A stretch of 64,000 bases of DNA from Octopus sinensis (GCF_006345805.1 NC_043013.1:49972001-50036000); one strand, 5' to 3'; shown: positions 15,658 through 62,940, counted from the stretch's first letter. Program-made: numbers and translations. Notes: generated from the sequence alone by a model not told the origin.

Positions 15658-15918
15658 TACCATTAGAAATGGAAGAGCCACCATCATCCCTTAAAGGGAA
15701 GAAAAGGATGTGGCTGAAACAAGAGATTGTAAACCTCTTAAAGCAACATCCACAAGGTATAGAAAAAGTTCATTTTTGGGATTTTATTAACCACAACATT
15801 AAAGGGATTGGACCAAAAAACAAATATGGTGTGAAGAGCATGAATGAATTATTTGAATATTATGATAACCTTGAAATTGTGTCAACAAATAATATTTCAT
15901 ATGTGAAGTTAAAAGCAG
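15658..15918 (+). CDS. Exon A: LOTUS/OST-HTH-like domain 1 (LKQEIVNLLKQHPQGI...KYGVKSMNELF)
   Basis: Acceptor ttttccag at 15657, donor GCAG|GTTTGT; 261 nt, phase 1-1; in-frame ATG at 15669. Confidence 0.8.
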
Positions 15919-15946
15919 GTTTGTAAATATTTGTTTCTTTTTATAT

Positions 15947-16372
15947 ATCATCATCATCATCATCATCACTTAACGTCCGCTTTCCATGCTAGCATGGGTT
16001 GGACTGTTCAACTGGGGTCTGGGAAGCCAGGAGGCTGCACCAGGCTCCAGTCTGATCTGGCAGTGTTTCTACGGCTGGATGCCCTTCCTAACGCCAACCA
16101 CTCCGTAAGTGTAGTGGGTGCTTTTTATGTGTCACTGGCACAGGTGCCAGGCGAGGCTGGCAACAGCCATAATCGGATGGTGCATTTTACGTGCCACTGG
16201 CTCAGGGGCCAGGCGAGGCTGGCAACGGCCATGATCGGATGGTGCTTTTTACGTGCTACCGGCACGGAGGCCCGTCGGGGCGGCACTGGCAACGGCCACG
16301 TTCGGATGGTTCTCTTACGTGCCACTGGCACTGGTATCACAGCTACAATTTCCATTGATGTTGATCTTATAA
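15947..16372 (-). mobile_element. RTE 3'-tail copy
   Basis: (CAT)n-ttaacgtccgctttccatgctagc. Confidence 0.88.
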
Positions 16373-16639
16373 ATATGTGTGTAAGCACACAGATGTACAC
16401 ATATATATACATACATGAAGGTTACTAACTCGATTTCGATTAGAGCCATTGCCTGACTTCTTTATGTCCTAGAATATCATAGATGAGCTGAACGAATATA
16501 GCTTTTGAGGCCTGCCAAAGACTTGCATGCTTTTTGACAATTAATGCAAGAAAACAGAGTCAAAAGCCTTAGTAAGATCACTGAATACCTGATAAAATCC
16601 TATTTGTTGTTCCACACACTTTTCCTGTAACTACCGTGC

Positions 16640-17480
16640 AGAGATCATGATGTCAACAGTAACCCTACCATTTCTGAATCCGCTCTGTGAAGAATCTCAT
16701 TAACCACATAGATCTGCAGCCGCTCCAACATTATATGTGATAAAACTCTTCCGGGTGTAGCAAGCAGGCAAATACCACAAAAGTTATTGCATTCATCTTT
16801 TTGTCCCTTACGCTTGAACACAACTCCCATGACTGCATCCTTCCAATCTTTTGGCATAACTTCATTTTCCCATATCTTCTGCATTGTTTCTGTCAGCATT
16901 TCCATCAAGTAGTACCATTCCGACTATCAGCTCCCAGTGCTTTATAATTGTCCAGCTTTGATATTGCTTTTATTGCTTCCTCCACTGACAGAGTGTCCTC
17001 TAAGCGTTCAATTAATGCATTCTGTGGAATCATATCAACACTTTTTTCATCAACAACTGATGGTCGATTCAGAAGTTCATTGAAATGTTCCTCCCATTGT
17101 TTTAAGATGTCTTTGGGCTCCCTCAATAAAAAAACATTCCTATTCTTCACATGAACCAAAGTAGGACATGATGGCCCATACACCTCTTGAAGGAAAATAT
17201 ATAATGACTTAGTGTTCTTAACATTGGAATCAGCCTCTATCTCTTCTTTCTTCCGCAACCAAGTTTCCTGCATGTTTCGAATCTTTGCTTTTACCTCTTT
17301 GGAAAAAGCTCTATTTTGGTCAGAATCATATGCGAGTAACAAATGCAATGCCTTTTGTTTTCCTTCCAACAAATGTGGAATATTTCCATCACTTTCATCA
17401 AACCAATCTTGATGTTTCTTTTCCTTGACTCCTAAAACTTCTTTACTTAGATTGTATAGTTGTCCTCTGAACTCCATCCA
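16640..17480 (-). mobile_element. RTE (BovB-like) RT fragment
   Basis: KKHQDWFDESD, ILKQWEEHFNELLN, WKDA...FKRKGQKDECNNFCGICLL...RVLSHI. Confidence 0.85.
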
Positions 17481-17599
17481 CTCATTTATCCAGTCTGAAT
17501 TTTCGTTTATCTACACTGTTTTATCCTTAAGGAGATTCACATGCAGAAGTTTATGATAATGAAATGAAATAATTATAATTTGCACTGAAAAAGAGGTTT

Positions 17600-17630
17600 T
17601 AGATGTGTGCTAGACTTATATATATATATA

Positions 17631-17713
<83 letters not shown>

Positions 17714-17959
17714 CCCTCTCTCTCTTTCGGAGAGGCACTGAGCAGCTATACGCACACATACACACACGGCAGTAACTCCCGCCTACCGAATTCAATCACA
17801 AAGCTCCGGTCGGCTCGGGGCTATAGTGGAAGACACCTACCCAAAGTGCCACGCAGTTGGATTGAACCCGAAACCACGTAGCTAAGAATATATATATATA
17901 TATATAATATATATATATGTGCATATATATATATATATGTGCATATATATATATATACG

Positions 17960-17991
<32 letters not shown>

Positions 17992-17992
17992 C

Positions 17993-25540: not shown

Positions 25541-26886
25541 AGAATGAAATGAAAGCAGTAAATAAACCCGGTATTGAAGAACTTAAGAAAGTCATATGTG
25601 AAGTACTTGATGACAACAGAGGTAGAGTAAAACGTGATCAGTTTTGGAATAAGGTGGCTGAGAAGCAAAGACATTTTGTGAATCCCTCATCCTATGGTTT
25701 CAGTAACTTATATGAATTTCTGAAACATTTCTCTGATATTGTGGTAGAGGTGAGTGACAAGAATGAGTTATATATACAGAAGAAAACTTCGAGTGATTTC
25801 AATGAACCGTCTATTGACAGAAACTCATCTTACTTAGGCGAGAACATGTATCATTTTCCCTCACTTAATGAAACAATAAGAAGTAACCCATCAAAGCCAT
25901 CTCTAGCAGAAGTGAGACACAGATTTTGTGACGTTCTTCTGAACTTTCCTCAGGGCATGCCACTGCCGAAACTGCTGGATAACTATGACAGAATGTATCA
26001 AAAGCCAAAATTTAACTTGTTAGATTATAATGTCAGTAATTTTGAAGAACTTTTTAAGTTGCCTGAGTTTCGGTGTTTTAGTGTTTTAGTACAGAACAAT
26101 ATGATAATGATTTATTTGAAGGAACACAATACTCCCGGCCATAACATGTTTTATCCCTCCAATGTTAATCAAATGCCAGCTCCTAAATGGGGTGAGCCAG
26201 CATTTCCCGCCATGCAACAACAGCCACATGTCACTGATAGCTTCCACCTCGCACCTTTCTCAAAACTACCCCCACCAAAAACGAATGAAAAAGAAATTTT
26301 AGTACCGCCTTTAAATATTGCCCCTGGAGAGACTCTGACTAAAGAACGTCTTGACAAAATTGCCAAAGAATGTATTGAAATACTTTCTGAAAATAATGAA
26401 TGTGTGTCTATTCAAGCCATTGAAAATCTTTTCCTTCAACGCCTTAGAAGAAAAAACTTACGAGAACTTGGTATTCGTACTTTAGATCATTTGCCGTCAG
26501 TTCATGATCATAATCGTTTGGTCTGTAAAGTTAATGCTTATATTCAAGCCTTTGTGACAGTTCGGTCTGTCTGTACACTGAAAGAACTGGAAGACTGCAT
26601 TGCACTTTATGTTAATGAAAGCAATTCTTTTCAAAGCCTGAAACTTGGACCTTTACATAAGATGCAAATTGTTTTTGATTTATTTAAATTTCCTCCTGGT
26701 GAAGACAGTTTCCCAGAACTCTCTACAATGGATGTTTTAGATAATATAAGAAATTTTCTTAATGAGAATAATTGGTACAAAAAACATGAAATGCAGGAAG
26801 TTATGACTTTTTTGACGAAGGCTTTTCACTGCAGTGATCCATTTCACCTTGGAATTCGCTTGCGGAGCCTTCCACTTGCTATTGGG
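25541..26886 (+). CDS. Exon B: LOTUS-like domains 2 and 3, Pro-rich linker, start of NOV N-terminal helical region
   Basis: Acceptor ctttccag, donor GGG|GTAAGG; 453-aa ORF; G+AG joins exon A in frame. Confidence 0.9.
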
Positions 26887-28574
26887 GTAAGGATACATTT
26901 CTTTATTTAAATTTTGGAATCGTTTATCCTTTTCTTATTTCAAGAAATTAATGACTCTCAGATAGTTTCATATCAATTGATGACACAATTATGTGACAAT
27001 ACTGATTTTGCTTTATTTCTTTTATTTTTGATTATTTTCTTTTTATCTCCATTATGTTTTCTTTCAGTTTTCATATAATAGCTTGGGCAAGGGTTTTATT
27101 TTTTAAAATTTGGGTATTTATGTCATTGAAAAATTGTTTTCACAACTAATTGCTCTCTTAGCCCTCTTAACACTGCTTTTCTTTTAATTAATTTTGAAAC
27201 TAATGAAGAATTTAGTAAATAATTATGTTTTTTATTAAGCTGACATTTGGAACAGCAATTAACATGAAATTTTATTCAAAGGTTTAAATTTGGAACTTTT
27301 TTAGATTATGAACCCAGTGTGTGTTTCAGGCAGGTTGGTATCAAAAGGATTAGAACTGACTTCTCAACTGTCAGGTGAAGATTGTTAAGGTTAAGTTTTA
27401 TTGAAAAAAGGCATAACTTCCATTTAATACTCCACCAAATTATTTGCCTCATAACTTCCAGAAAAATAAATACTTTTTAATGAAACTTTCACCAAATTGC
27501 TTATATCCTGTTGATTGAGTGTATGTAAAGATTTATTGGAAAAAATTTTTCTGAGGGGTGAGGGAGAAGGGTTTCTGGAAAATGAAGTTTTAGATCAGAC
27601 AGCCCACATAAGTTGAAATTTCTCCATTTTGACAGGGATTTTTTCCAGTGTTTTTCATCAAAGTCTTCAGAATGATGGGAGACATCTTTTCACAAAAAAA
27701 AAATTTAAAAAATTTGAAAATTTAAATAGATGCTTGGTTCATTTTATTTGTGTCATGCAAAGTAAAAGTGATACATACAAGAATAAGAATAAAAGAAATT
27801 GGATAAAAGAAACAACCAAAAATAACTGATAAAAACCTACAGATGTTTCAATCTGACATATATATATAATTTAGAGACAAACCACTATTTAGTTATTCCA
27901 TCAATAGTGAAGTTATTATCTATAATAACAACATAGAAATTAATTATATATCTTATAATTATTATTCTAAAAATCTCATAACAAATCAAACATTAAATTG
28001 ACTATGCGAGTTTCATGACTAAATATATAAATCAATAATATTAAAATTTAATAGTAATTCAATAAAAAAATATTTAGCCACTCTTCAGGTCAAAAAAATA
28101 ACATAAATAAATTTAGATATTATAATACAATAATAAATATATAAATATATGTATATTGACAGTAAATAATTCAATAAAGTATAACAATATTAATGTAAAG
28201 CAAAAACATGACTTATCTTATTGATGAAAACCAGTTAAAAAAAATTTTAAACTTTAAACTTACAATCTAGCATTGTAAAAAGCCTATCTTGTTAAACATG
28301 ACGTAAACAATAGATATACAATAAATAAATAGATGTATGTATTTAATGATAAAATAAAAAATAATCAAATAAACATGATGTAATATACCATTTACAGGGA
28401 AAAATTCTAAATTCGCAATAATTTAAAACTACAACATTATATGTAAAAATATAAAATTAATTAAATGTCCATAAATTAATATATATTCTTCAATTACTTT
28501 TATTAATCCCTTGGTTTAAAACTTGTTCTAGTTATGGTCACACACTACATAACATACAACTAATTTATACTCAT

Positions 28575-28790
28575 TATAAAAAGGAGCACTCCATCGGTTA
28601 CGACGAGAATCCCAGCTGAAACGATCAACAGAACAGCCTGTTCGTTAAATGAATGTGCAAGTGACTGAGCAATCCACAGACACGTGTACCTTTAACGTAG
28701 TTCTCAGGGAGATTCAGTGTGACAAGTCCAGCCCTTTGAAATACAGGTACAATTCATTTTTGCCAGCTGAGTAAACTGGAGCAACGTGCA
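28575..28790. mobile_element. Short interspersed repeat fragment (SINE-like)
   Basis: GC-richer block ending tcatttttgccagctgagtaaactggagcaacgtg; family not assigned. Confidence 0.35.
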
Positions 28791-29754
28791 ATATTTTTCT
28801 TACAGTTGTCTCACAAGGAATATAGCTTCAGTGATGCCTTTTCTTGAAACAAAACTGAATTGCATCTCATCTACACTAATTAGGTTTTCAGTAACTTTTT
28901 CTGTAACTTTCATAACTTTGCCCAACAGTTCCGATGTCTTTGTAGTTACCTCTCTCTTGTACATTTCTCCTTGTACTTGTAGCAGTTTGCAGTGCTAGCT
29001 GCTTAGTATGATACTTTGTATTACTTGATTTACAATTTGAGTGACTATTCTCCATCCTTTTGTGCCAGATATTTTAAGAGTCTTGGCAACTATCATTGTT
29101 AAGATAGTCTTTCCCAACTGCTGCTCCCCTTTCTTTCACATCCCTTACCAGTCTATCATATTGCTGTCAACTTGGATGGCTGGTCTCTCCACATACTAAT
29201 ATCTCTTTGGCAAACCTTTTGATTATATTTTCTTTATCAAGCCCTTGGACTCATAAGCCAGTTATGCAGTTTTCATGGCATATAAATGACTGAGATCCCA
29301 ACATTCCTCCTCCCCTATTTTGGGAGGAGGAAGAGGAAGCAAATTGATTACATCAACCCCAGCACTTGACTGCTACTTTATTTCATTGACCCCAAAACAA
29401 TGAAAGGCACAGTTGACTTTTGGTGGAATTTGACCTGAGAGCATAAAGAGCTGGAAGAAATACTGCTGGGCATTTTGTCCAATGTGCTAATAATTCTGCC
29501 AGCTTGCTGCCTTATTTGTTAACATTACGGAGCATTAAATCAAGTTTTCTAGACAATGGCTTTAACCATTACTCTTTGAAAAAGAATTTTACACCTCTTT
29601 TCTCATTTTACTTTTGTGAAATGAAAATCGGCTCTGAGCTTAAAATATTCACAGGTAGAAATGTTTTACTGCCAACATTTGAACCTTGACTTTGTTTGTG
29701 TAAATTTGTATTTGAAACTGCTAGGTATGAACACGAAAGGTACCAATCTGTCTA

Positions 29755-30554
29755 CAAGGTGGTATCAAAAGGTTCCTGGACTAGTTATGTTTAATAAAAA
29801 ATAACTTAGTTTCCTAAGTTTTAATACCTCCTTCAAAATAGTCACCTTGCGCAGCAATATACTGATCTCAGCATTACTGCCACTTTTGGAATCTGGCCTG
29901 CAGGTGCTAAATCTGGCAAATAGGGTGGGTGTAGAAGTGATACCATATTGTTTTTGGCAAGAAACTCACGAGTGAGGAGAGCTTGGTGACAGGGTGCATT
30001 GTCATCATGAAGAATCCAGTTCTTTGTGCTCTACAGATTCGGTCATTTTCCCCAAACGTCCTCCATCAAACACTTCAAAACATTGCAGTAGGGCTCTTGA
30101 TGGACAATCTGGCCCTGGGGTGGGGTGGGGGCATCAATTCTTGATGCACAATACCATGTTTCTGGGGGTGACACACATGGCAGGTCTTCCAGATCATTCA
30201 TTGTCTTCCAGGGGCGTTCTTCTGCTTTCGAAATGCCTGTGTCACTCAAAAATATTGCGCATGGCCCATTGCTTTGTCACTGTAAGCTTGCTCAATGTCT
30301 CTGTGGCAGACTTCCTGAGTTCAATGCAAAGTTTCATGTTGGCTCTTGGTTCCTGTCCATGACAAGAATCACAGACTACAGCATACACATGATCAGGAAA
30401 TCAAAAATTTCTTAACCTGTGAAGTAAACGCAGGGATGTCACTTGGCACACTGCCTCACGAAGGTCACTGCTCACTCTCACTGTGCACGCAACTGTGTGC
30501 TGCCATCTGTTGGTGCACTACAGAACTAGCCCGGGGACATTTGATACAACTTTG
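29755..30554 (-). mobile_element. Internally deleted mariner (Tc1/mariner) element
   Basis: Imperfect TIRs caaggtggtatcaaaaggttcctggactagt / actagcccggggacatttgatacaactttg, TA on both sides; remnants ANMKLCIELRKSATETL, SGRP and HPPYLPDLAPA. Confidence 0.8.
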
Positions 30555-30780
30555 TATATCATGTGGTAGATATTGATACTAAAGTTCTCAATATCTAAAT
30601 ACATACATGCTCCAGCGAATTAGTGCCCTTATAATTACAGAGAAACTGCTCACTAAATTCAATGTACTAATATTACAGTGTCCCTTTTTTTATACACTTG
30701 CTAAGCATGAGTTGATCTTCAACAGAATGTTAACTTGTTTTTTTTTTTCAAATGCACTTGTACAATACCCTTTATTGTAG

Positions 30781-31234
30781 GTCATAAAACGTGCTCAGAA
30801 AGATGATTCAACCCTTACCAGAAAGGTCTTTGACGATATGAAAATGAAATTAACTGAAGAAATACAAAATGCTTTCAATAAATTCCGTGGCTACATTCTC
30901 GTAACGAAACAAAAGGATACACATTTGAAGGAGCACTATGCTAAAATGTCTGCTGATGCTGCACTGAAGGAGATCTTTGAACGGCTGTGTTTGTTGCTTC
31001 AAATTGATGAACCTAAAACTATAGCAGAACAGAAGCAAAAAAGAAGATTCATAGAGATTTCTAATAGTTTCTTTCAACAAATAAGTAATCATGATTTAGC
31101 TAGGACTGTCTTTCATGTTGCTATTTGTGTCAGTAGTACCGAACTACAAGCAACCGCTCTGGAATTCCTGGACCGAAGTCCTCAGCCTGCACCCAATGAC
31201 ACTAATAGAAATGAACGTCCTCCTCCTTCAAAAG
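30781..31234 (+). CDS. Exon C (VIKRAQKD...PPPSK)
   Basis: Acceptor tttattgtag, donor AAAG|GTAAGT; phase 0 in, phase 1 out. Confidence 0.88.
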
Positions 31235-31409
31235 GTAAGTGGTCCCCTCTTATATGGCTCACAGTTTCATTCCTTGTTTTTAGTTTTGGAGTGACTGGCA
31301 CCTCACACTGCCTGGTTTATCACCACTACCTGGCCCTTGGTTTCTTCAGCAGACTTCATTCTGTTGCAAGGCTTCTGGTTGGTGATTCCATCATCTATCA
31401 ATACACCTG

Positions 31410-31622
31410 TTTCTTTACTACCTACAAGGGGACAAACAAGGACAGACACACGGATTAAGTCAATTACATCGACCCCAGTGCGTAGCTGGTACTTATTTAA
31501 TCGACCCTAAAAGGATGAAAGGCAAAGTCGACCTCGACGGAATTTGAACTCAGAGCGTAACGACAGATGAAATACCGCTAAGCATTTCACCCGGCGCGCT
31601 AACGTTTCTGCCAGTTCGCCGA
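31410..31622 (-). mobile_element. tRNA-derived SINE family 2
   Basis: Reverse complement of the 47694 copy. Confidence 0.85.
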
Positions 31623-31699
31623 AGTATATAGATGATTAAGGGCTGTGAATACCTAACGAAAATGGGTTGCATTATTAAAATTTACTTTTTATTGTTTTA

Positions 31700-39604: not shown

Positions 39605-39640
<36 letters not shown>

Positions 39641-44609: not shown

Positions 44610-44671
44610 GTAAACATTTTACTGTCCTTCTTACATCATTACTTTAAGTTCTTCTTTATTATATTTGTTAT

Positions 44672-45063
44672 CTCTTCTCTCTTTTTACTTGTTTCAGTCA
44701 TTTGACTGCGGCCATGCTGGAGCACCGCCTTTAGTCGAGCACATCGACCCCGGGACTTATTCTTTGTAAGCCCAGTACTTATTCTATTGGTCTCTTTTGC
44801 CGAACCGCTAAGTGACAGGGACGTAAACACACCAGCATCGGTTGTCAAGCAATGCTAGGGGGACAAACACACACACACATACACACATATATATATACAT
44901 ATATACGACAGGCTTCTTTCAGTTTCCGTCTACCAAATCCACTCACAAGGCATTGGTCGGCCCGGGGCTATAGCAGAAGACACTTGCCCAAGATGCCACG
45001 CAGTGGGACTAAACCCGCAACCATGTGGTTGGTTAGCAAGCTACTTACCACACAGCCACTCCT
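44672..45063 (-). mobile_element. tRNA-derived SINE family 1
   Basis: Reverse complement of the 40686 copy. Confidence 0.87.
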
Positions 45064-45433
45064 GTTTTATATATAAAAAAAATTCTCCTACAAATTCTAC
45101 AATATCTGAAGTCAGATAATGCCCACTTTTTAACTATTCAGAATGAAAGAAGGACTTTAAGCATCTGACATTTCATTGAGCTTACGGCTTACACACGATT
45201 TGACTTGCCCTTAGTTTACTGCACTAGATAGTATAAATGCCAAGGATTTTAACTTCTCCTGGCTCAGTCAATGGACTTGAATGTTCATCAGGCACATAGC
45301 AGAGTTCATGTACACCTAAAGGGCTGGTTCATGACAGAAGCTTTCACACAACATTCTTGTTTCAAGTTTTTGCACATACTTTAAAGAAAAGTCTGGAGTA
45401 ATATGAGCATCACAACTTCACATATGGTTTCAG

Positions 45434-45633
45434 ATCAATGAATTGCACCCTTGGCAAGGTTGGAATATTAGGCTACCAAAACCAAGAAACCGTTCTTGCA
45501 ACATTGCACAATTGCCCCTTACTAGAGGACATGTCGGCTTGGTCTCACTGGCCTTTGGTATTTGAACCGCAATTTGGAAAGCTGCTTGATTTTGTGCTCA
45601 AGAATGGTGGAGAAAAATATGTACAACTTGAAG
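45434..45633 (+). CDS. Exon G (SMNCTLG...CPLLEDMSAWSHWPLVFEPQFG...)
   Basis: Acceptor tttcag, donor GAAG|GTATGT; phase 2 in, 1 out. Confidence 0.88.
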
Positions 45634-46907
45634 GTATGTTTTCGACTTTTTTGTTATTCATTTCTGTTGTAGTTTAAACAAAAAGGCTGTTTGAATGAAT
45701 GTAATTGATGTAAATGTTTAAGCCAGTTTGATAATGTCAATAGCATATCGATAAAGATTTCATTTTGAGAATTTCTCAATGTTTGCTATTTATGTGTTAC
45801 TGAATAAATGAGACAACTTTGCAAATCTTTTTTCTCTAATGATAGCTTCATCGCAATAGTGTTGCCTCAATACTCTCCTTCTCCTCTTTTTGCTACTTGT
45901 TATGCTGAACACATAAATTACATCTCAGCTACACAAGTTTTATTTGTAATATTGTTTGCTTGTAAAAGTGTTTCATACAGAAAGAATCTGTAAAGGAACT
46001 GGTTGATTCTTTACACTGTTTGGGTGCAACACAATTTCCTTTCCTTTGTTTCCAGAAAATTACCAGTCAGGAACAAGAACGCAACCGTAAAAATATATAT
46101 GACTCTTTATTTTCTTATTTACAAAAGAAGCACGTTGGTATATTGGTATCCACTTGGTTCGATATAGCAAGGCTGAATTTTAACACTTGTAAGATAAACC
46201 TCACAACAAACTCAGCAGCAACAGAGCAGGTCAAATCCCAAGCGTCTGGGACAGGAGAATAGGCTGATCACACGTTTAACACGTCCTTTCTCTTCAATAG
46301 CCGTGTCTCAAGTCAACGACGCTAACAAGGAACGCGATAGAATTTTCTTCCCCAGTCTCTAGCGCATGTGCATGAGGGAACTTCCTTAGGCCTTTCCAGA
46401 AGGTTCCAGCCCTGCACACGCACACTGAAGAATGACGTCCCGCTCACGCACACTGGAAAATGATGTCACTACAAATCCCTTCAATCCAGAGTTAGCTCCG
46501 TTTTCTGTTTCACTCAGCATACATCCGTACATGCATGCATATATAGTGATGTTGTATTAAAATTTAGTTCCATTGAAAATTATGATACATATTTGAAAAA
46601 ATTACATTATCAATTATATTCTTAATGCATTTTCAGATGTGTTTTGTGATAACCATTCTACAATGGTTATCACAAAGCAAACAACAAGCAAAAACAAAAA
46701 AAAAAGCAAAAACATTGTGAAACAGAGATTTATGCTCTAGGCATTAAGTAAAAATAAGGATTGGTATTTTGTACTGATTTGAGAGTTGATGAGATTTGAT
46801 GATATATTAGGGTTACTCATGGTAGAGTAGTGATATTTAGAAATTGTTTGCTTTGTGAAAGAAGCAAATCTGACCTGGTAAATTTAGCGGGATAAATTTT
46901 TTTTTAA

Positions 46908-47232
46908 TCATCATCATCATTTAACGTCCGTTCTCCATGCTAGCATGGGTTGGACGGTTCGACCGGGGATCTGGGAAGCCAGAAGGCTGCACCAGACTCC
47001 AGTCTTATCTGGCAATATTTCTACAGCTGGATGCCCTTCCTAACGCTAACCACTCCGTGAGTGTAGTGGGTGCTTTTTACGTGCCACCGACACAGGTGCC
47101 AGGCGAGGCTGGTAACGGCCACGGTCGGATTGGTGCATTTTACGTGCCACCGGCACGGAAGCCAGTCGAGGCGGCACTGGCTTCGGCCACGATTCGGATG
47201 GTGCTTTTTACATGCCACTGGCACGGAAGCCT
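46908..47232 (-). mobile_element. RTE 3'-tail copy
   Basis: Family motifs. Confidence 0.85.
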
Positions 47233-47393
47233 GGATAAATCTCCTGGATAAATATGTTGAGCTGGTGAGTTGCTTCTAGTTCTTGTATGTACAACTTTTT
47301 CTTGGTCTGAAAATTCAGATGCCCCCATGAAAAAATGTTCACCAATGCACTAAAGCTAAAGAAATTCAAATATGTGTACATTATTTGTTACAG

Positions 47394-47648
47394 GTGGCAG
47401 AAAGTCAGTACGCACTGATTTTATGGTCCTTGAGACTGAACCCGGAAAATATTTAAAAATCATCAGTGAGACTTCTGTGGAAAAGTTCTCTGCTGCCTGT
47501 TCTACGAGTGATGTGATCAACACTTGTGGTCATCTGGTATCCCTCATTGTTCACAATAAAGGTCTGGCTATGACACCATTTGCCTACCTCTCTAATATCT
47601 TACAGACACAACTTTTCACATTGAATAATGATACTAACAGCAAACAAG
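47394..47648 (+). CDS. Exon H (GRKSVRTDF...CGHLVSLIV...SKQ)
   Basis: Acceptor ttacag, donor CAAG|GTAAGT; phase 1-1. Confidence 0.88.
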
Positions 47649-47693
47649 GTAAGTTGCTTTTTAATATTTTCTTTATTAAAATAGTGCAAGAAA

Positions 47694-47915
47694 GGCGGTG
47701 AGCTGGCAGACACGTTAGCACGCCGGGCGAAATGCTTAGCCGTATTTCGTCTGCCGTTACGTTCTGAGTCCAAATTCTGCCGAGGTCGACTTTGCCTTTC
47801 TTCCTTTCGGGGTTGATTAAATAAGTACCAGTTGCGCACTGGGTCGATGTAATCGACTTAATCCGTTTGTCTGCCCTTGTTTGTCCCCTTTGTGTGTAGT
47901 CCCTTGTGGGCAGTA
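47694..47915 (+). mobile_element. tRNA-derived SINE family 2
   Basis: ggcggtgagctggcaga..gttag head, gtccaaattc B-box-like, central gactttgcctttc..cctttcggggt.gat.aaataagtacc. Confidence 0.85.
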
Positions 47916-48465
47916 AAGAAATCATTATAGTGCAAGAAGATGAAAATGGATTATTTTCTCTTTCACTACGGCATTAGCCATAATAACACCACTCTTATCC
48001 TTTTCTTTGACTATTTCAATAATGGAAAAGAAAGTTATTAAAACGAGATCTTCTGTGCAAGCTTGAATATTTAATGATGAGTGTACACTAGTAACATTTA
48101 GAAAGAAAAGATATTTCCTGAGATAGCAGCTCTCAAAATGAAGAACTATGCAAAAAAAAACCCCCAAAAAAACAAGTCAGCTTGAAAGAGCAGATAGAGT
48201 ATAACTAGATTTTGTGTAAGGAAGTTTTATGGGGTTCATTAGATGGCTTTCATCGGAATGTGATCTATAACAGATTAATAATTGAAGAAGGCAGATGTTC
48301 TCAGATATGGGATCTGTTAAATAAAATGGAGTGAAACACAAAGTGTGAGTTTTATCTGCTTTTGTGTATAAATTTGTATGTGTATGTTTATGCTATAATA
48401 TATTTATTTTCAATTCATTCAGAAGAATTTCTTCTCTGATAATTGTTATTTTCTGATGTTTCTAG

Positions 48466-48557
48466 ATGATGAAAAATATACGGGTAACCCAGCGAAATTT
48501 GTGCTGGACTGCTTACTGCGTTTGCCCATTCAGATCTGTGTGTCTGTTGCAAATAAG
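48466..48557 (+). CDS. Exon I (DDEKYTGNPAKFVLDCLLRLPIQICVSVANK), absent from ORF track
   Basis: Acceptor tttctag, donor AAG|GTAAGT; 92 nt bridges phase 1 to phase 0 exactly as required. Confidence 0.85.
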
Positions 48558-49202
48558 GTAAGTCCTTTTTTTATGTTGCGCCCTTATAGGTCTTTCTCCT
48601 TTCCCAAATAAAACATATTCATTCTGGTTCCAATGAGGTAAACTGGACAGAACAATGCTCATCACTAAGTATTGTTTTGTTTTCTTTATTGAAACACTTA
48701 TTAGCCAGTGAATTTAATTATATAATTTGTGTTCTTTTCTCATTTATTATCAGCACTTTACCTTGAACCTCTTTTGAAATCTCTGTGGGTCTGGATGTGA
48801 GGATTACTACTCATGGAGATTGGTGATTATGAGCGTATTGAATTTCAACATAGTTATTTATCCTGCAATGGTAAAGCAGAAATATAAAGTATGTACTTAT
48901 ACGTACATACATCAATTAACTACACTACCAGTTCTTACTGAATGTAAGATAAGATCGTGTATATGCTCAAAATGAGAATACATGTATATGATAAGAACAC
49001 AATGTATAGAGGGATGTTCCCTAAATAAGAACTTATGTGTCTAACTACTTAAAGATTGTAGCCTTCACCTAGTTAGATTTCATTCAGGTTGGTGGTCAGA
49101 ATCCTTCAAATCTCTCCAGTTTTAAAATAATGCATTATAAAAAAAAACTTTGGGTCATAGTCACTCAATAGATAAAACTCATACTTGAATGGGTAATACT
49201 TA

Positions 49203-49424
49203 TTTCTTTACTACCCACAAGGGGCTAAACACAGAGGGAACAGATAAAGTGATTAAGTCGATTATATCAATCCCAGTGCGTAACTGGTACTTATTTAATC
49301 GACCCCGTAAGGATGAAAGGCAAAGTTGACCTCGGCGGAATTTGAACTCACAATGTAACAGCAGACGAAATACCGCTAAGTATTTCGCCCGGCATGCTAA
49401 CGTTTCTGCCAGCTCGCCGCCTTA
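49203..49424 (-). mobile_element. tRNA-derived SINE family 2
   Basis: Reverse complement of the 47694 copy. Confidence 0.83.
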
Positions 49425-49734
49425 GGAATGGGTAATATCATTGAGCTTTAGTCCAATGGAGGAATTGTAAACAGCAAACCATTAGACCAAATACATAAAA
49501 TACTTGCTCTAATTTCGAAAACATAGCTGCATGAAGAAATAGACAGAAAAAAGATGAGTACAGCTTCAGTGTGAGATCCACCTCTCCCGGTTCCATCAAC
49601 TTCTTGATAGCAAATCAGGAGCCAATTAATTATGAACCAAATGAATATTCCCAGATTAAATGATGACCTGCTTTAGACAGTGTTTATGGACTATACTCCT
49701 GGTCAGATATGTTTCCCTAGAAAAGTGTACAGAT

Positions 49735-49889
49735 GAGTGGCTGCGTGGTAAGTAGCTTGCTAACCAACCACATGGTTCCGGGTTCAGTCCCACTTCGTGG
49801 CATCTTGGGCAAGTGTCTTCTGCTATAGCCCTGGGCCGACCAATGCTTTGTGAGTGGATTTGGTAGACGGAAACTGAAAGAAGCCCGTC

Positions 49890-49929
<40 letters not shown>

Positions 49930-50145
49930 ATGTGTGTGTATATGTTTGTATGTCTGTGTTTGTCCCCCTAGCATTGCTTGACAACCGATGCTGGTGTGTT
50001 TACGTCCCCGTCACTTAGCGGTTTGGCAAAAGAGACCGATAGAATAAGTACTGGGCTTACAAAGAATAAGTCCTGGGGTCGATTTGCTCGACTAAAGGTG
50101 GTGCTCCAGCATGGCCGCAGTCAAATGACTGAAACAGTAAAAGAA
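49735..50145 (+). mobile_element. tRNA-derived SINE family 1
   Basis: Matches the 40686 copy. Confidence 0.87.
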
Positions 50146-50273
50146 ATTGTAGTATGATAGTAATTCTGCTCTGTGTGTCAACTTGTAGTGAATAATATTA
50201 ATTCAGTCTTAATCTTTTTTTTGAAGAAACCATAAATGTTCATTAGTAATTCTGTTTTCTTTTGTTTTGAAAG

Positions 50274-50504
50274 ATGTTCCTGGAGCCACTTGGGAAAGTT
50301 CTTGGCTTAACAGAATCTAAGCTTGTTCTCTGGAAGAACTGCCAAAATATACAGGAAACCAACCGTCTTGAGACTTTGGGGTGTTTACTTGGCATTGCTG
50401 ACTGGGTTGGCACTTTAAATAAAATGAAAGGTTCTTTCATAACATCTGAAATTGAAACTATAGCTGAAATGGAAGATGACCAGCAAACGGACAAGGAATC
50501 TGAG
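50274..50504 (+). CDS. Exon J (MFLEPLGKVLG...LGCLLGIADW...ESE)
   Basis: Acceptor ttgaaag, donor GAG|GTATGT; phase 0-0. Confidence 0.85.
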
Positions 50505-54051: not shown

Positions 54052-54199
54052 GAGGAGCTCATAGAATCAGATTCTGAAGACAGTATAAAATCTTCAGACG
54101 AGGACGATATTATAACAATGCCGAATATGGTTCTAGAAACACAGAGTACAGAGGAACTGGATAATGTCCTGCCTGAAATTATGCCAAACAAAAATTCTG
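54052..54199 (+). CDS. Exon K: acidic linker (EELIESDSEDSIKSSDEDD...), absent from ORF track
   Basis: Long polypyrimidine tract + tag acceptor, donor TCTG|GTAATC; phase 0 in, 1 out. Confidence 0.8.
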
Positions 54200-59040: not shown

Positions 59041-59508
59041 ATGTTATTATAATTGATGAAGAAAATGAAGAAACTGGTACAAATGATGCTAATAAACAGG
59101 ATGAGAGTTTACCTGAGGAAGAAAAGGAAGAAATCTGCTCAGAGAAGGCTTTGATTGAAACAATACGTCGAGAAGAATTTGGTCTTGGCATTAAACTTAA
59201 TGCTGATGGTCAGAAGTTGATTGATCGGCAACAAGAACGACTGGGACGTAGTTTGGATCGATTATCTAAAGATTTGTATAGTAAAGACACTCATTTTGTG
59301 TTGGAGTTGATCCAAAATGCTGATGACAACACCTACCCAGATAACTTTGATTCTAAGGATTCGTCAGCCTGTCCATCAGTGCAGTTTGGTATAGATGATA
59401 GTTCAGTGACTATTCTCAACAATGAGGTTGGTTTTAAGGAAAAAAATATTCGAGCCATTTGTGATGTTGGTAAGAGTACCAAGGAAAAACGCAAATTTGG
59501 TTATATTG
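59041..59508 (+). CDS. Exon L: sacsin/NOV GHKL ATPase, N-box and G1 region
   Basis: LSKDLYSKDTHFVLELIQNADDN, NNEVGF, NIRAICDVGKSTK; acceptor tttacag, donor ATTG|GTGAGT. Confidence 0.93.
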
Positions 59509-60040: not shown

Positions 60041-60229
60041 CTGATTCATGTACTAAATAATTATTATTTCACAAACCAACCTAGTTAAGCAATTGACTTT
60101 ATGTGTGTATATGTTGATGTATTTCTATATACTTCTACCTACTTACTTATACCTATACAGGTAAATGCATATACTTATCAATGAGCATCTATTGAGGTGA
60201 AAACATTCTGTGCCGTATGAATATATCCC

Positions 60230-60637
60230 TTTTCTAGCAGTGTCATATGAAATTGTCACCCATAATTATGACCCTAGTATCGATCTATTGCATTTCAATC
60301 TATTTTAGATTTAGGGTTAGTTAGGGTTAGGGTTAGGGGTGGGAGGAAGGGTATCTTTTTTTCTTCACAAATGTAAATAAACCCAATGTGTTTCTTAAAC
60401 GAGGAACATATTCATACAGCACAGAATGTTTTTCACCTCAATAGACAGTCATTGATTGGTTGAAATTGCCGAAATGCAAGAAATTAAAGACCAAATATCT
60501 TACAAACTATAGAATTTTCTCAATAAAGCCAAGAGAAAAAGATGTTTTATAAACACATTCTACCAGTATACGAAGTTTAAAATTTTTTAGTTACCTAGAA
60601 ATTATGTTAAAAACTGCCGTTCAAACCGAAAAGATCC
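60230..60637. repeat. Interspersed repeat containing a short TTAGGG run
   Basis: tttagggttagttagggttagggttagggg near 60310-60340; ends aaaactgccgttcaaaccgaaaagatcc. Confidence 0.5.
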
Positions 60638-60861
60638 AAGTTTTAAGCCTATGAAAACCAACTATCCACGCATTTTAGTATCTGTAGATCTTCTGTATTG
60701 AAGCTATGGATTTTTTTCTTATTTTTCAGTTGGATCTTGCCATAGGTTTTTTCATATTGATTAGCCAAGTTTATTCCATGACAGTAATCAACATTCATCC
60801 AAGATTTTCTGTGAATGTCTTATTTTTATACTTCATATTGAATATTTTCTGTTTTTGCTAG

Positions 60862-61015
60862 GTCAAAAGGGAATTGGATTCAAGTCTGTATTTAGAATAA
60901 CAGATCGTCCTGAAATCCATTCCAACAAGTATCATATTTGTTTTGACGTGAACAGTGGTCCAACAGGCTACATCCTCCCCCACTGGATTGATAGCTACTC
61001 TCATCCAGAAGATAA
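60862..61015 (+). CDS. Exon M: GHKL G2 box (GQKGIGFKSVF...GYILPHW)
   Basis: Acceptor ttgctag, donor AA|GTTAGT; phase 1 in, 2 out. Confidence 0.92.
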
Positions 61016-61268
61016 GTTAGTTTCATTAAATTTTTTTTTTTTTTACTGACGTGTATTTTCCCCTTTATTAATATTTTACAGTTTCATCATCTTCACCCAA
61101 CTGTTTCCTTGTGTAAAACAAACTAATGGTTCATCTTACTTCAGCTTATGTAGAAAAATATTAAGCCATAAACAGTTGTAGGATTGTCATCTGAGATACT
61201 GATATCTGTTGACTGTCTTCTCAAAATGATTCTTGAAACAACTGGTTCAGTAAATTCTCTTTATTTAA

Positions 61269-61615
61269 TCATCATCATCATCATCATCATCATCGTCCGT
61301 TTTCCATGCTAGCATGGGTTGGACGGTTCAACTGGGGTCTGGTAAGCCATGGAGGCTGCACCAGGCTCCAGTCTGATTTGGCAGTGTTTCTACAGCTGGA
61401 TGCCGTTCCTAACGCCAACCACTCCATGAGTGTAGTGGGTGTTTTTTACGTGCCACCGGCACAGGAGCCAGCGCAGGCTGGCAAACGGCCACAATCGGTT
61501 GGTGCTTTTACGTGTCACCGACACGGACGCCAGTCAGGCGACACTAGTAACTGCTACGCTCGAACGGTGCTCTTACGTGTCACCAGCACTGGTGTCTTAA
61601 CTACAATTACCAATC
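61269..61615 (-). mobile_element. RTE 3'-tail copy
   Basis: Family motifs. Confidence 0.85.
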
Positions 61616-61945
61616 CTAATATATATATACTCTGACACTTTATGCTTTACATAATCACTACATTTAGTGTTCAGCATGGTCCTGTACCTAATTGAAGCAG
61701 AAAATATTTGATGTTCATGACCTTTGCAATTATATGTAATCATTCAAAACATATCACTGCACCACGATCTGTTTTTTAGCCAAGCTGACTGGAGTTACTC
61801 AACAATATACTTAGCTTAGATGAAATGCTTAGCTGCATTTCATCTCTCTTTACATTCTGAGTTATTCTGTTGAAATCAGGTTTGCCTTTCCTCCTTTTGG
61901 GGTTGATGAAATAAATACCGATTGAACCTTGGGGTCAGTATAGTT

Positions 61946-62370
61946 CATCATCATCATCATCATCATTGTTTAACGTCCGTTTTCCATGCTAGCATGGGTT
62001 GGACAGTTCGACCAGGGTCTGGGAAGCCAGAAGGCTGCACCAGGCCCAGTCTGATCTGGCAATGTTTCTAAAGCTGGATGCCCTTCCTAACGCCAACCAC
62101 TCTGAGAGTGTAGTGGGTGCTTTTTATGTGCCACCTGCACAAGTGCCAGACGAGGCTGGCAAACGGCCACGATCGGATGGTGCTTTTTACGTGCCACCGG
62201 CACGGGGGCCAGATGAAACTGTCAATGGCCATGATCGGATGGTGCTTTTTCGTGCCACCGGCACGGAGGCCAGTTGGGGCGGTGCTGGCAACGGCCACGT
62301 TCGGACGGTTCTCTTACGTGCCACCGGCACTGGTATCTCAGCTACAATTTTCATTGATGTTGAAAGATTT
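61946..62370 (-). mobile_element. RTE 3'-tail copy
   Basis: Family motifs. Confidence 0.87.
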
Positions 62371-62804
62371 CGATTTCGATTCCTCCCCTAAAAATTGCTG
62401 GCCTTGTACCAAAATTTGAAACCTATATTAGATACAGCAACATAGTAAACAATAAAACATTCTGAATTTCCTATGCTGCTGCAAAAAGGAAGGCTGTAAA
62501 TTTCATCATAGAATCCACAGAGACAGCCACTAGGATGTGACTTTGGATAAAGAGGGCAGGCCATTGTTGCTATAGGGGTGCAAGCAGGGACTTGATCAGT
62601 CCTGGCTGCGTCAACTGGGTAAGGGGATCTGATGTTGAAAGACCTGAAACCCACTGAGGACCCAGAAACATCACTAATGATGCAATGCAGAGCATCTGCA
62701 AGATATATCTTAAAACTTAAATGCATATTGTTTTTTTTTTGTTTTTTTTAATATTTATTTTAAAATCTCTCAGTCATGAGTTTACTTTTTTCCTTTCTTA
62801 ATAG

Positions 62805-62940
62805 TTGGGTTACAAAGATTCTTCTACCCTTAAAGGATGGTGTACAACAGTCCAAATGTCTTGCTGCTAGCTTCAATGACATACACCCATCTTTGCTACT
62901 CTTTCTACATCGATTGAAAAAGATCACTTTAAGGAATGAG
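62805..62940 (+). CDS. Exon N (WVTKILLPLK...IHPSLLLFLHRLKKITLRNE)
   Basis: Acceptor ttaatag, donor GAG|GTAAGT; LLLFL..L..I motif as in sacsin/NOV repeats. Confidence 0.9.

What the first reader, a model, noticed from the sequence alone, without database searches (positions are those of the whole stretch)
15658..62940. Tandem LOTUS/OST-HTH-like domains fused to a NO VEIN/sacsin-type GHKL ATPase
Seen: phase-consistent splicing gives one frame of at least 1403 aa. It starts with three ~60-70 aa units (LKQEIVNLLKQHPQGI..KYGVKSMNELF; LKKVICEVLDDNRGRV..SYGFSNLYEFL; VRHRFCDVLLNFPQGMPLPKLLDNYDRMY..DYNVSNFEELF) and reaches the sacsin/NOV ATPase motifs ELIQNADDN and GQKGIGFKSVF. Established: LOTUS domains occur in Oskar, TDRD5/7 and MARF1 and engage RNA or Vasa-type DEAD-box helicases in germ granules; plant NO VEIN carries a sacsin-like GHKL ATPase and a C-terminal DUF3883 nuclease-like domain. 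Inference: this may be an RNP- or germ-granule-targeted ATPase/nuclease, possibly for transposon or viral defence. I do not recognise this fusion as a characterised animal system, but I cannot confirm novelty without a search.
Basis: partly seen in the sequence, partly recalled or inferred. Interest (0 to 1): 0.75.

Follow-up and report, generated by a model that had tools for sequence, protein, structure and literature searches.

The report
Octopus NO VEIN gene, LOTUS-tagged
The window holds the first half of the octopus copy of NO VEIN/Tiamat, a large ATPase-nuclease gene with three small LOTUS domains at its front end. The gene is real and intact, but it is already annotated and this domain fusion was described in two 2026 preprints.

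Summary
Fourteen + strand exons (15669-62940), all with GT-AG borders, splice in phase to 1403 aa without a stop. This protein is 100% identical to residues 1-1403 of RefSeq XP_036366467.1, 'protein NO VEIN isoform X2 [Octopus sinensis]' (2900 aa). The gene runs off the 3' end of the window. [quoted passage not shown]

All three N-terminal units are LOTUS domains. Pfam OST-HTH scores 32.4 bits on the first 290 aa. AlphaFold2 gives three confident winged-helix domains. For unit 3 folded alone, the 16 best PDB matches are all LOTUS structures (MARF1, Oskar, TDRD7).

The ATPase start matches the antiphage Tiamat (TmtA) models at E=1e-53, and its sacsin/NOV motifs are intact.

The fusion is not new. 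Two October 2026 preprints describe LOTUS-NOV/Tiamat proteins in aquatic animals, and one of them lists molluscs. The only increment here is that routine Pfam scanning misses the octopus LOTUS units (23.0 bits against a 23.8 cut-off).

Function in animals is untested. A link to Vasa has no support here.

The parts
15669..15918 (+). Coding exon 1 (aa 1-83 plus 1 base). The ATG is at 15669. The acceptor at 15657/15658 is used by isoform X1, which has a further upstream exon outside the window.
15690..15911 (+). LOTUS domain 1 (aa 8-81)
   Evidence: Pfam OST-HTH E=0.012 over profile positions 4-68 of 71. In the AF2 model, aa 11-80 have 10-residue block-mean pLDDT 87-95, with the fold a1-b1-a2-a3-a4-b2-b3. 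phmmer links it to N-terminal repeats of homologues.
25541..26886 (+). Exon 2 (aa 84-532): LOTUS 2, LOTUS 3 and the first conserved motif of the NOV N-terminal region
25573..25782 (+). LOTUS domain 2 (aa 95-164)
   Evidence: Pfam OST-HTH 24.8 bits, above the 23.8 cut-off, on exon 2 alone. AF2 10-residue block-mean pLDDT is 78-96.
25903..26118 (+). LOTUS domain 3 (aa 205-276)
   Evidence: No Pfam hit on its own. A profile anchored on it hits TDRD7 (9e-5), MARF1 (4e-4), Tejas (1e-3) and TDRD5 (2e-3) in the PDB. AF2 of the unit alone gives pLDDT 83.9 and pTM 0.71. The 16 best Foldseek PDB hits are all LOTUS domains, TM 0.57-0.78, rmsd 2.1-5.4 A (all but one at most 3.0 A).
26278..50456 (+). Eukaryote-specific conserved NOV N-terminal region (aa ~330-1085). 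It spans the end of exon 2 through exon 10, with introns between.
   Evidence: This is the strongest conservation (aa 246-447 of exon 2, 55 proteins at E<=1e-30). It is conserved in homologues across animal phyla. It has no Pfam family. It corresponds to the three unannotated N-terminal motifs of NOV in 10.64898/2026.09.30.755639.
30781..31234 (+). Exon 3
38708..38889 (+). Exon 4
43046..43180 (+). Exon 5. It contains the start Met of the predicted LOTUS-less isoform X3 (MSGTSESNK).
44452..44609 (+). Exon 6
45434..45633 (+). Exon 7
47394..47648 (+). Exon 8
48466..48557 (+). Exon 9
50274..50504 (+). Exon 10
54052..54199 (+). Exon 11 (acidic, low-complexity linker)
   Evidence: It is confirmed by identity to XP_036366467.1.
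59041..59508 (+). Exon 12: acidic linker, the pre-ATPase helices and the first half of the Bergerat ATPase fold. N-box ELIQNADD is at 59304-59327 and G1 box NNEVGF at 59418-59435.
   Evidence: Pfam SACS, PADLOC TmtA E=1e-53, HtpG/TRAP1/sacsin alignment, motif conservation, coordinates
60862..61015 (+). Exon 13: G2 box (G)QKGIGFKSVF at 60862-60893
62805..62940 (+). Exon 14, the last exon inside the window. The GTAAGT donor is at 62941 and the gene continues beyond base 64000.
   Evidence: The full-length protein has 1497 more residues.

Best explanation
Identity. The region is the 5' half (14 coding exons, aa 1-1403 of 2900) of the Octopus sinensis gene annotated 'protein NO VEIN'. This is the cephalopod orthologue of the metazoan branch of the NOV/Tiamat family.

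Architecture, shown by sequence:
- three tandem LOTUS (winged-helix) domains;
- about 750 aa of the eukaryote-specific NOV N-terminal region;
- an acidic linker;
- a sacsin/Hsp90-like GHKL ATPase;
- outside the window, the Tiamat core and a C-terminal PD-(D/E)xK (NOV_C) nuclease.

Mechanism, inferred from relatives and not shown here:
- The ATPase dimerises and cycles with ATP, as in other GHL proteins.
- The central TPR-like repeats bind a client or ligand.
- The C-terminal nuclease cuts nucleic acid. Purified B. cereus Tiamat hydrolyses ATP, cleaves ssDNA and nicks dsDNA, according to the preprint.
- The LOTUS array, which looks like the minimal RNA-binding subclass and not the Vasa-binding extended subclass, tethers the enzyme to RNA or to RNA-rich granules.

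Whether the animal protein acts in antiviral or anti-transposon defence, or in a housekeeping role as plant NOV does in development, is unknown.
For: - Exon model and identity to XP_036366467.1.
- RefSeq names in the cluster ('protein NO VEIN isoform X1/X2/X3 [Octopus sinensis]').
- Full-length protein: PADLOC TmtA E=3.2e-133 (aa 1186-2454), Pfam NOV_C 4.5e-17 and SACS 3.3e-14.
- The ATPase part inside the window hits TmtA at 1e-53 and aligns to HtpG (1.3e-5), TRAP1 and sacsin with the catalytic E, the Mg-binding N and the G2 loop.
- The motifs EL[IV]QNADD and G[QH]KGIGFKSVF are each present in 140 of 141 long animal homologues, and the G1 box is NNExGF in the variants tallied.
- LOTUS: Pfam 32.4 bits on aa 1-290, and 27 of 46 aligned repeat segments hit OST-HTH. 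AF2 gives three confident domains. Foldseek finds the TDRD7 tandem LOTUS at rank 2 and single LOTUS domains at target TM 0.70-0.79. Unit 3 was tested alone.
- One mRNA in a relative: Logan contig SRR8281668_3796 is 9325 bp with a single ORF at 99-8954 encoding P0152. P0152 carries all three units plus SACS and NOV_C.
- Literature: LOTUS-Tiamat fusions, B. cereus Tiamat biochemistry and predicted P-body localisation; NOV in animals with LOTUS.
Against: - Nothing contradicts the identity.
- For the mechanism, no experiment exists on any animal member.
- The G1 box has Asn (NNEVGF) where Hsp90 has the adenine-binding Asp. ATP binding therefore rests on family-level biochemistry from a bacterial homologue.
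- The nuclease and two thirds of the Tiamat core are outside the window.
- The O. bimaculoides annotation splits the locus into a 323-aa and a 2349-aa model, and O. sinensis isoform X3 starts in exon 5. LOTUS-less products may therefore also exist.
- Assignment to minimal LOTUS is weak, because the Oskar extension is disordered until Vasa binds.
Confidence: 0.9

Rival explanations
1. Exons 1-2 (LOTUS units) and exons 3-14 (NOV part) are two adjacent genes, and the 'fusion' is an artefact of gene prediction.
For: The O. bimaculoides annotation has a separate 323-aa protein (XP_014789138.1) that ends by reading into the intron after exon 2. It also has a 2349-aa protein (XP_052829754.1) that starts in exon 3. 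No RNA-seq of this locus was examined here.
Against: - All 13 junctions are phase-compatible GT-AG sites.
- The O. sinensis and O. vulgaris models, and the Argonauta hians model, join them.
- A 9.3-kb intron-free contig from a sequencing run of a relative encodes LOTUS units, ATPase and NOV_C in one ORF.
- The same N-terminal LOTUS plus NOV architecture recurs in bivalves, gastropods, echinoderms, hemichordates, sharks and teleosts.
- The 323-aa model ends in intron read-through (...LAIGVRIYLFI), which is typical of a truncated prediction on a 15.7-kb scaffold.
Confidence: 0.04
2. The three N-terminal units are generic winged-helix domains (DNA-binding type or ESCRT-II/ScpB-like), not LOTUS domains.
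For: - The Foldseek E-values are modest (8.5e-3 to 0.1).
- Tandem winged-helix proteins (Pol III RPC34, STK19, ScpB, ESCRT-II) appear among the hits to the three-domain model.
- Unit 3 has no Pfam hit, and unit 1 is below the gathering score.
- A single-sequence PDB search found nothing significant.
Against: - OST-HTH is the only winged-helix family Pfam reports, and it exceeds its cut-off on aa 1-290.
- The ten best PDB hits of a profile anchored on unit 3 are all LOTUS proteins.
- With unit 3 folded alone, ranks 1-16 are all LOTUS structures with probability 0.99-1.00.
- The multi-domain hits have rmsd 11-28 A, so they reflect only the tandem arrangement.
Confidence: 0.05
3. The LOTUS array is of the extended (eLOTUS) type. 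It recruits and activates the DEAD-box helicase Vasa/DDX4, which would make this a germ-granule enzyme.
For: [quoted passage not shown]
- Unit 3 superposes well on TDRD7 LOTUS1 and on Oskar.
- The extension is disordered without Vasa, so its absence from a model is not decisive.
- Fish homologues are highly expressed in testis among other tissues.
Against: - The AF2 models show only 4-5-residue helical turns after strand b3, followed by low-confidence linkers.
- The linkers differ between Octopus and Argonauta, whereas the eLOTUS a5 helix is the most conserved surface.
- The best E-value is to MARF1, a minimal LOTUS.
- Expression of fish homologues is broad, not restricted to the germline.
Confidence: 0.12

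Closest known systems
Octopus sinensis 'protein NO VEIN isoform X2', XP_036366467.1 (also isoforms X1/X3; O. vulgaris CAI9734952.1)
   Same: It is identical over all 1403 residues encoded in the window, with the same exon structure.
   Different: Nothing differs. The window simply lacks the 3' half of the gene. Routine Pfam scanning does not flag the LOTUS domains of this protein: OST-HTH scores 23.0 bits against a cut-off of 23.8 on the full length, and PF12872 is absent from the precomputed list.
LOTUS-Tiamat / animal NOV proteins (e.g. zebrafish wu:fj29h11), described in bioRxiv 10.64898/2026.09.30.754977 and 10.64898/2026.09.30.755639
   Same: Both have N-terminal tandem LOTUS domains, the NOV N-terminal region, a GHL ATPase, the Tiamat core and a NOV_C nuclease. 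Fish homologues score E about 1e-165 to 1e-190 at 33-36% identity over 75% of the query. The preprint explicitly lists molluscs among the taxa with the fusion.
   Different: Octopus has three LOTUS units and zebrafish is reported to have four. The octopus units are more divergent from the Pfam model.
Arabidopsis thaliana NO VEIN (NOV, AT4G13750)
   Same: Both have the eukaryote-specific N-terminal region, the sacsin-type ATPase and the NOV_C nuclease (Pfam SACS and NOV_C; literature).
   Different: Plant NOV has no LOTUS domains. Its known roles are auxin-dependent patterning and, per the 2026 preprint, a contribution to antiviral responses.
Bacterial antiphage Tiamat (TmtA, e.g. Bacillus cereus)
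   Same: The ATPase-to-nuclease core matches the PADLOC TmtA model PDLC03972 at E=3e-133 (O. sinensis, best stretch covering model positions 4-1070 of 1302) and at 5e-137 (Argonauta, positions 5-1291 of 1302).
   Different: Bacterial Tiamat lacks the ~1180-aa N-terminal extension (LOTUS domains plus the NOV N-terminal region). Its defence function is shown only for bacteria.
Sacsin (SACS)
   Same: The subtype of Hsp90-like ATPase domain is shared (Pfam PF25794; sacsin structures 5v44-5v47 hit at E 0.004-0.04).
   Different: Sacsin has three such repeats plus UBL, DnaJ and HEPN domains, and no NOV_C or LOTUS. None of those domains was found here.
LOTUS proteins of the germline (TDRD5, TDRD7, Oskar, Tejas, MARF1)
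   Same: The domain fold and sequence profile are shared.
   Different: Their partner domains are Tudor, OSK, or NYN plus RRM. Here the partner is an ATPase-nuclease. No conserved eLOTUS extension was seen.

Membership tests
NOV/Tiamat (TmtA) family | N-terminal GHL (Bergerat-fold) ATPase of the sacsin/Hsp90-like subtype with an intact N-box, G1 box and G2 box | tested here: met
   - Pfam SACS: 1.9e-14.
- PADLOC TmtA: 1e-53 on window aa 1151-1403.
- Alignment to HtpG/TRAP1 covers E1239, N1243 and the G2 loop.
- Family-wide conservation of the motifs.
- Only the first ~170 aa of the domain lie in the window.
NOV/Tiamat (TmtA) family | Central DUF3684/TPR-like core between the ATPase and the nuclease | tested here: met
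   This part is not in the window. In the full-length protein of the same gene (P0261), the TmtA model aligns over aa 1186-2454. In the Argonauta orthologue it covers 5-1291 of 1302 positions.
NOV/Tiamat (TmtA) family | C-terminal PD-(D/E)xK nuclease (NOV_C/DUF3883) with catalytic D...ExK | tested here: met
   This part is not in the window. In P0261, Pfam NOV_C scores 4.5e-17 at aa 2776-2878. The motif is YD(2812)...IE(2834)VK(2836).
NOV/Tiamat (TmtA) family | ATPase and DNase activity; role in defence | not testable with these tools
   Biochemistry exists only for B. cereus Tiamat, and virus phenotypes only for plant NOV knock-down.
Eukaryotic NOV (as opposed to bare Tiamat) | Conserved eukaryote-specific N-terminal region of about 1000 aa | tested here: met
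   Window aa ~330-1085 is conserved in hundreds of animal homologues. Direct alignment to plant NOV motifs was not done; that equivalence is taken from 10.64898/2026.09.30.755639.
LOTUS / OST-HTH (PF12872) | Match to the family profile at or above the curated cut-off | tested here: met
   - aa 1-290: 32.4 bits against 23.8.
- Exon 2 alone: 24.8 bits.
- Unit 1 alone: 15.9 bits.
- Unit 3 alone: no hit.
- Full-length protein: 23.0 bits, just below the cut-off.
The feature is therefore met for the array and only marginal per unit.
LOTUS / OST-HTH (PF12872) | Winged helix-turn-helix fold closest to solved LOTUS domains | tested here: met
   AF2 gives three domains whose 10-residue block-mean pLDDT is 78-96. 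TDRD5, TDRD7 and Tejas match at target TM 0.70-0.79. For unit 3 alone, ranks 1-16 are all LOTUS. Units 1 and 2 were not searched separately.
Extended LOTUS (eLOTUS, Vasa-binding subclass) | Conserved C-terminal extension (helix a5) after strand b3 | tested here: inconclusive
   Only 4-5-residue helices follow b3, and after them come low-confidence, poorly conserved linkers (compare). The extension is disordered in apo Oskar, so its absence from a model is not proof.
Sacsin | Three sacsin repeat regions plus UBL, DnaJ and HEPN domains | tested here: not met
   A single SACS-type ATPase is present, and no UBL, DnaJ or HEPN hits were found in P0001, P0261 or P0152.

The most novel reading that the evidence does not exclude
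In animals, LOTUS-NOV would be an RNA-granule-resident immune nuclease. The LOTUS array would dock the enzyme on viral or transposon RNA, or on a DEAD-box helicase such as Vasa/DDX4, in P-bodies or germ granules. ATP-driven dimerisation would then license the C-terminal PD-(D/E)xK nuclease. This would be a prokaryote-derived defence module rewired to eukaryotic RNP condensates. A smaller novel point is that aa ~359-401 may be a degenerate fourth LOTUS-like module. If so, part of the 'unannotated' NOV N-terminal region would derive from LOTUS duplication (hhalign probability 35%).
Probability: 0.15. Interest if true: 0.7.

Novelty: already known. Interest (0 to 1): 0.22.

Why it matters
It matters little as a discovery. 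The gene is in RefSeq under the name 'protein NO VEIN', and the LOTUS-NOV/Tiamat architecture in aquatic animals was published as preprints in October 2026.

It has some value as annotation. It shows that cephalopod NOV carries three LOTUS domains that fall just under the Pfam threshold. Surveys based on InterPro or Pfam hits may therefore undercount LOTUS fusions in molluscs. It also shows that the O. bimaculoides gene model is probably split wrongly.

The family itself remains an open problem. It is a bacterial antiphage ATPase-nuclease that was retained in many aquatic animals, lost in ecdysozoans and tetrapods, and has no known function in any animal.

Tried and rejected
1. A single-sequence phmmer search of aa 1-285 against PDB sequences gave only spurious centrin hits (E 0.16). 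A profile and a fold search were needed instead.
2. I looked for further cryptic LOTUS-like modules in the conserved N-terminal region, because 'GYGRFLSFLQ' in exon 4 looked LOTUS-like by eye. I ran hhalign of seven region alignments against a LOTUS alignment. Only aa 359-401 gave a weak signal (probability 35%, P=4e-4). Exon 4 and the other regions gave nothing.
3. I searched the window for the first coding exon of isoform X1 (MEKNVD). It is absent, so it lies upstream of the window or is itself split.
4. Rfam at gathering thresholds over the whole window gave no RNA family.
5. Pfam on ten intronic or upstream ORFs gave only an RVT_1 fragment and a weak hAT dimerisation hit.
6. To get past the length filter of the protein search, the query was the window's 1403 aa followed by the Argonauta C-terminal half. 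Only residues 1-1403 were scored.
7. I considered MORC and sacsin membership and rejected both, because none of their accessory domains is present.

Full report
**What is in the window.** The window is AT-rich animal DNA (GC 0.22-0.44). It is full of microsatellites and of a SINE-like repeat that translates to '...LDALPNANHSVSVVGAFYVPPAQVP...'. There are 18 copies of this repeat and none overlaps an exon. Rfam finds no RNA family.

A full HMMER search with the 453-aa ORF at 25549-26907 returned 223 relatives. The best was a 2870-aa protein (P0001, 61% identity) that a later search named 'protein NO VEIN-like [Argonauta hians]'.

**Gene model.** tblastn of P0001 against the window placed 13 collinear blocks covering its residues 9-1387. 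I then searched every GT(GC)/AG pair near the block ends for combinations that keep the frame open, and scored them against P0001. A fourteenth, acidic exon at 54052-54199 was included. Each junction resolved to one canonical site with a good consensus, for example CAG|GTTTGT...TTTCCAG|AG, GGG|GTAAGG...TTGTAG|GTC and AAG|GTAAGT...TTTCAG|AA.

The 14 exons are 15669-15918, 25541-26886, 30781-31234, 38708-38889, 43046-43180, 44452-44609, 45434-45633, 47394-47648, 48466-48557, 50274-50504, 54052-54199, 59041-59508, 60862-61015 and 62805-62940. They give 4209 nt = 1403 aa with no stop. Introns are 0.8-9.6 kb long.

**Whose gene it is.** Full-length relatives are about 2900 aa, and the protein search filters candidates by length. 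I therefore queried with the 1403 aa extended by the Argonauta C-terminal half, and scored only residues 1-1403.

- The best hit was a 2900-aa Octopus vulgaris protein at 99% identity and 100% coverage.
- Its 90% cluster holds 'protein NO VEIN isoform X1/X2/X3 [Octopus sinensis]' (XP_036366466-8), two O. vulgaris entries and two O. bimaculoides entries.
- My model is identical, 0 mismatches in 1403, to the N-terminus of O. sinensis isoform X2. It has 12 substitutions and no indel against O. vulgaris.

The window is therefore O. sinensis DNA, and the exon model equals the RefSeq model. The gene continues for another 1497 residues beyond the window.

Isoform X1 adds an upstream coding exon (MEKNVD) spliced to the acceptor at 15658. 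That exon is not in the window. Isoform X3 is predicted to start at MSGTSESNK in exon 5 and would lack the LOTUS units.

**Is it one gene?** The O. bimaculoides annotation splits the locus. One model is 323 aa, ends by reading into the intron after exon 2, and sits on a 15.7-kb scaffold. The other is 2349 aa and starts in exon 3. Against it:

- All junctions are phase-compatible.
- Three other cephalopod annotations join the parts.
- A 9325-bp contig assembled from run SRR8281668 carries one uninterrupted ORF (99-8954) for a 2951-aa homologue (P0152, 48% identity). It has all three N-terminal units, the SACS domain and NOV_C. An ORF of 8.9 kb without introns on a 9.3-kb contig is what a transcript looks like, so in that relative the fusion is one mRNA.
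- The same order of domains recurs in bivalves, gastropods, a chiton, a nemertean, annelids, echinoderms, a hemichordate, lancelets, jawless fishes, sharks, rays and ray-finned fishes.

I did not see RNA-seq for this locus itself.

**The LOTUS units.** By Pfam the evidence is real but marginal:

| Query | OST-HTH result |
|---|---|
| Exon 1 alone | E=0.012, 15.9 bits, but profile positions 4-68 of 71 covered |
| Exon 2 alone | 24.8 bits (cut-off 23.8) |
| aa 1-290 | 32.4 bits |
| Full-length protein | 23.0 bits, just under the cut-off |
| Unit 3 alone | no hit |

PF12872 is also missing from the precomputed domain list of the octopus entries.

Each unit, searched with phmmer against the collected homologues, finds the tandem N-terminal repeats of mollusc, echinoderm and fish NOV proteins. 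Of 46 aligned repeat segments, 27 hit OST-HTH on their own, the best at 2e-12.

AlphaFold2 on aa 1-290 with that alignment gave mean pLDDT 80.6. It shows three compact domains (aa 8-81, 95-164 and 205-276), mostly at pLDDT 85-96. Each has the order helix, short strand, three helices, beta-hairpin. The linkers are disordered.

Foldseek against the PDB put the TDRD7 LOTUS2-3 tandem at rank 2. Single LOTUS domains of TDRD5, TDRD7 and Tejas matched at target TM 0.70-0.79 and rmsd 2.0-3.1 A. The other high ranks were tandem winged-helix proteins matched at rmsd 11-28 A, which reflects only the repeat arrangement.

Unit 3 had the weakest sequence support, so I tested it alone:

- A 22-sequence alignment anchored on it shows the LOTUS signature (P-x-G-I, Y..Y, Y-G, E-L).
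- As a profile, its ten best PDB hits are all LOTUS proteins: TDRD7 9e-5, MARF1 4e-4, Tejas 1e-3, TDRD5 2e-3, Oskar 0.04. A caveat is that the alignment includes fish repeats that are themselves good LOTUS matches.
- Its own model has pLDDT 83.9 and pTM 0.71.
- Foldseek ranks 1-16 are all MARF1, Oskar or TDRD7 LOTUS structures, with probability 0.99-1.00.

All three units are LOTUS domains.

**Which kind of LOTUS.** Vasa binding needs the C-terminal extension (helix a5) of 'extended' LOTUS domains. 'Minimal' LOTUS domains, such as those of MARF1, lack it (PMC5458760). [quoted passage not shown]

In both models only a 4-5-residue helical turn follows strand b3, and after it come low-confidence linkers. 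Those linkers are poorly conserved even between Octopus and Argonauta. I therefore read the units as minimal LOTUS. Confidence is modest, because the Oskar extension is itself disordered until Vasa binds.

**The rest of the window's protein.** Residues ~330-1085 have no Pfam family, yet they are the best conserved part. Aa 246-447 of exon 2 alone gave 55 relatives at E<=1e-30. This is the eukaryote-specific NOV N-terminal region with three unannotated structural motifs described by Lageide et al..

Profile-profile comparison of seven sub-regions with a LOTUS alignment gave one weak signal. Aa 359-401 aligned to the first half of the LOTUS profile at probability 35% and P=4e-4. The other six regions gave nothing. 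This is a lead, not a finding.

An acidic low-complexity linker follows (exons 10-12). The ATPase begins after it.

- Pfam SACS scores 1.9e-14.
- PADLOC TmtA scores 1e-53 over model positions 3-226.
- The alignment to HtpG (1.3e-5), TRAP1 (1e-4) and sacsin (4e-3) matches ELIQNADD to ELISNASD, the catalytic Glu and Mg-binding Asn. It also matches GQKGIGFKSVF to GQFGVGFYSAF.
- The G1 box reads NNEVGF where Hsp90 has DNGIGM, so Asn replaces the adenine-contacting Asp. This is a family trait: every G1 variant tallied among the animal homologues reads NNExGF, and EL[IV]QNADD and G[QH]KGIGFKSVF are each present in 140 of 141.

**The full-length protein (outside the window).** XP_036366467.1 matches the Tiamat model PDLC03972 at 3.2e-133 over aa 1186-2454. 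It has Pfam NOV_C at 2776-2878 (4.5e-17), with the nuclease triad D2812...E2834-x-K2836. The Argonauta orthologue covers positions 5-1291 of the 1302-position TmtA model. No sacsin accessory domain (UBL, DnaJ, HEPN) and no MORC feature is present.

**Comparison with what is known.** Two preprints dated 1 October 2026 cover this.

- Yuan et al. (10.64898/2026.09.30.754977) show that Tiamat homologues are common in eukaryotes, including 50-80% of mollusc proteomes. [quoted passage not shown] These proteins are predicted to localise to P-bodies. B. cereus Tiamat hydrolyses ATP, cleaves ssDNA and nicks dsDNA.
- Lageide et al. (10.64898/2026.09.30.755639) show that plant NOV resembles Tiamat. NOV knock-down weakens antiviral responses in Nicotiana benthamiana. 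Animals have full NOV homologues, some with LOTUS domains.

It is untested in any animal.

**Verdict.** The domain interpretation is correct. The nuclease part is outside the window. The Vasa link is unsupported. The novelty claim fails, because the gene is annotated and the architecture is published.

The small increment is twofold. The octopus LOTUS units sit just under the Pfam threshold and were confirmed here by fold. The O. bimaculoides model is probably split in error.

I put identity at about 0.97. I put the inferred mechanism (an ATP-gated nuclease tethered to RNA or RNP by minimal LOTUS domains) at about 0.5.

Noticed in passing
window 34993-36567, minus strand (inside intron 3 of the NOV gene): This is an intact 524-aa ORF with no Pfam domain. 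It belongs to a very large family (2126 hits) of ~555-aa proteins without any annotated domain. The best match is 85% identical, in the mantis shrimp Oratosquilla oratoria. Others are 56-59% identical in a frog (Eleutherodactylus), aphids and a moth, and hundreds sit on ~2-2.6 kb contigs. The patchy cross-phylum distribution at high identity suggests a compact single-ORF mobile element, possibly transferred horizontally.
   Followed up: partly
window aa 359-401 of the model (about 26365-26493, + strand): The first conserved motif of the NOV N-terminal region shows weak profile-profile similarity to the first half of the LOTUS domain (hhalign probability 35%, P=4e-4). It may be a degenerate fourth winged-helix module.
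   Followed up: partly
18 places, e.g. 15961-16420, 24511-25248, 55072-55448, 61961-62363 (+) and 6377-6703, 33192-33539, 63271-63584 (-): A SINE-like interspersed repeat of about 300-450 bp contains internal sub-repeats that translate to 'LDALPNANHSVSVVGAFYVPPAQVP'. It makes up about 5.9 kb of the window, occurs in both orientations and never overlaps an exon. It creates many spurious ORFs of 80-170 aa.
   Followed up: partly
window 55530-57112 (+), 37986-38426 (+), 16645-17477 (-): These are transposon remnants inside introns. One is a hAT-like element (Dimer_Tnp_hAT E=0.008, with a 346-aa open segment upstream). One is a reverse-transcriptase fragment (RVT_1 E=1.3e-6). The third is an ORF on the minus strand that looks retroelement-like by eye and has no Pfam hit.
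   Followed up: partly
Related proteins XP_014789138.1 and XP_052829754.1 (O. bimaculoides); XP_036366468.1 (O. sinensis isoform X3): The O. bimaculoides annotation splits the orthologous gene into a 323-aa piece, which ends in intron read-through after exon 2, and a 2349-aa piece. This is probably a misannotation. O. sinensis isoform X3 is predicted to start in exon 5 and would lack all LOTUS domains.
   Followed up: partly
window 59418-59435 (+), G1 box of the ATPase: The family-wide G1 box is NNExGF, with Asn at the position of the adenine-binding Asp of Hsp90 (DNGIGM). Nucleotide recognition may therefore differ from Hsp90.
   Followed up: partly
window 1-6300 and 17600-18350: Long (TA/CA)n-type microsatellite tracts (GC 0.22-0.24) give overlapping 'YIYIYI' pseudo-ORFs on both strands. 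No gene was seen upstream of the NOV start within the window.
   Followed up: no
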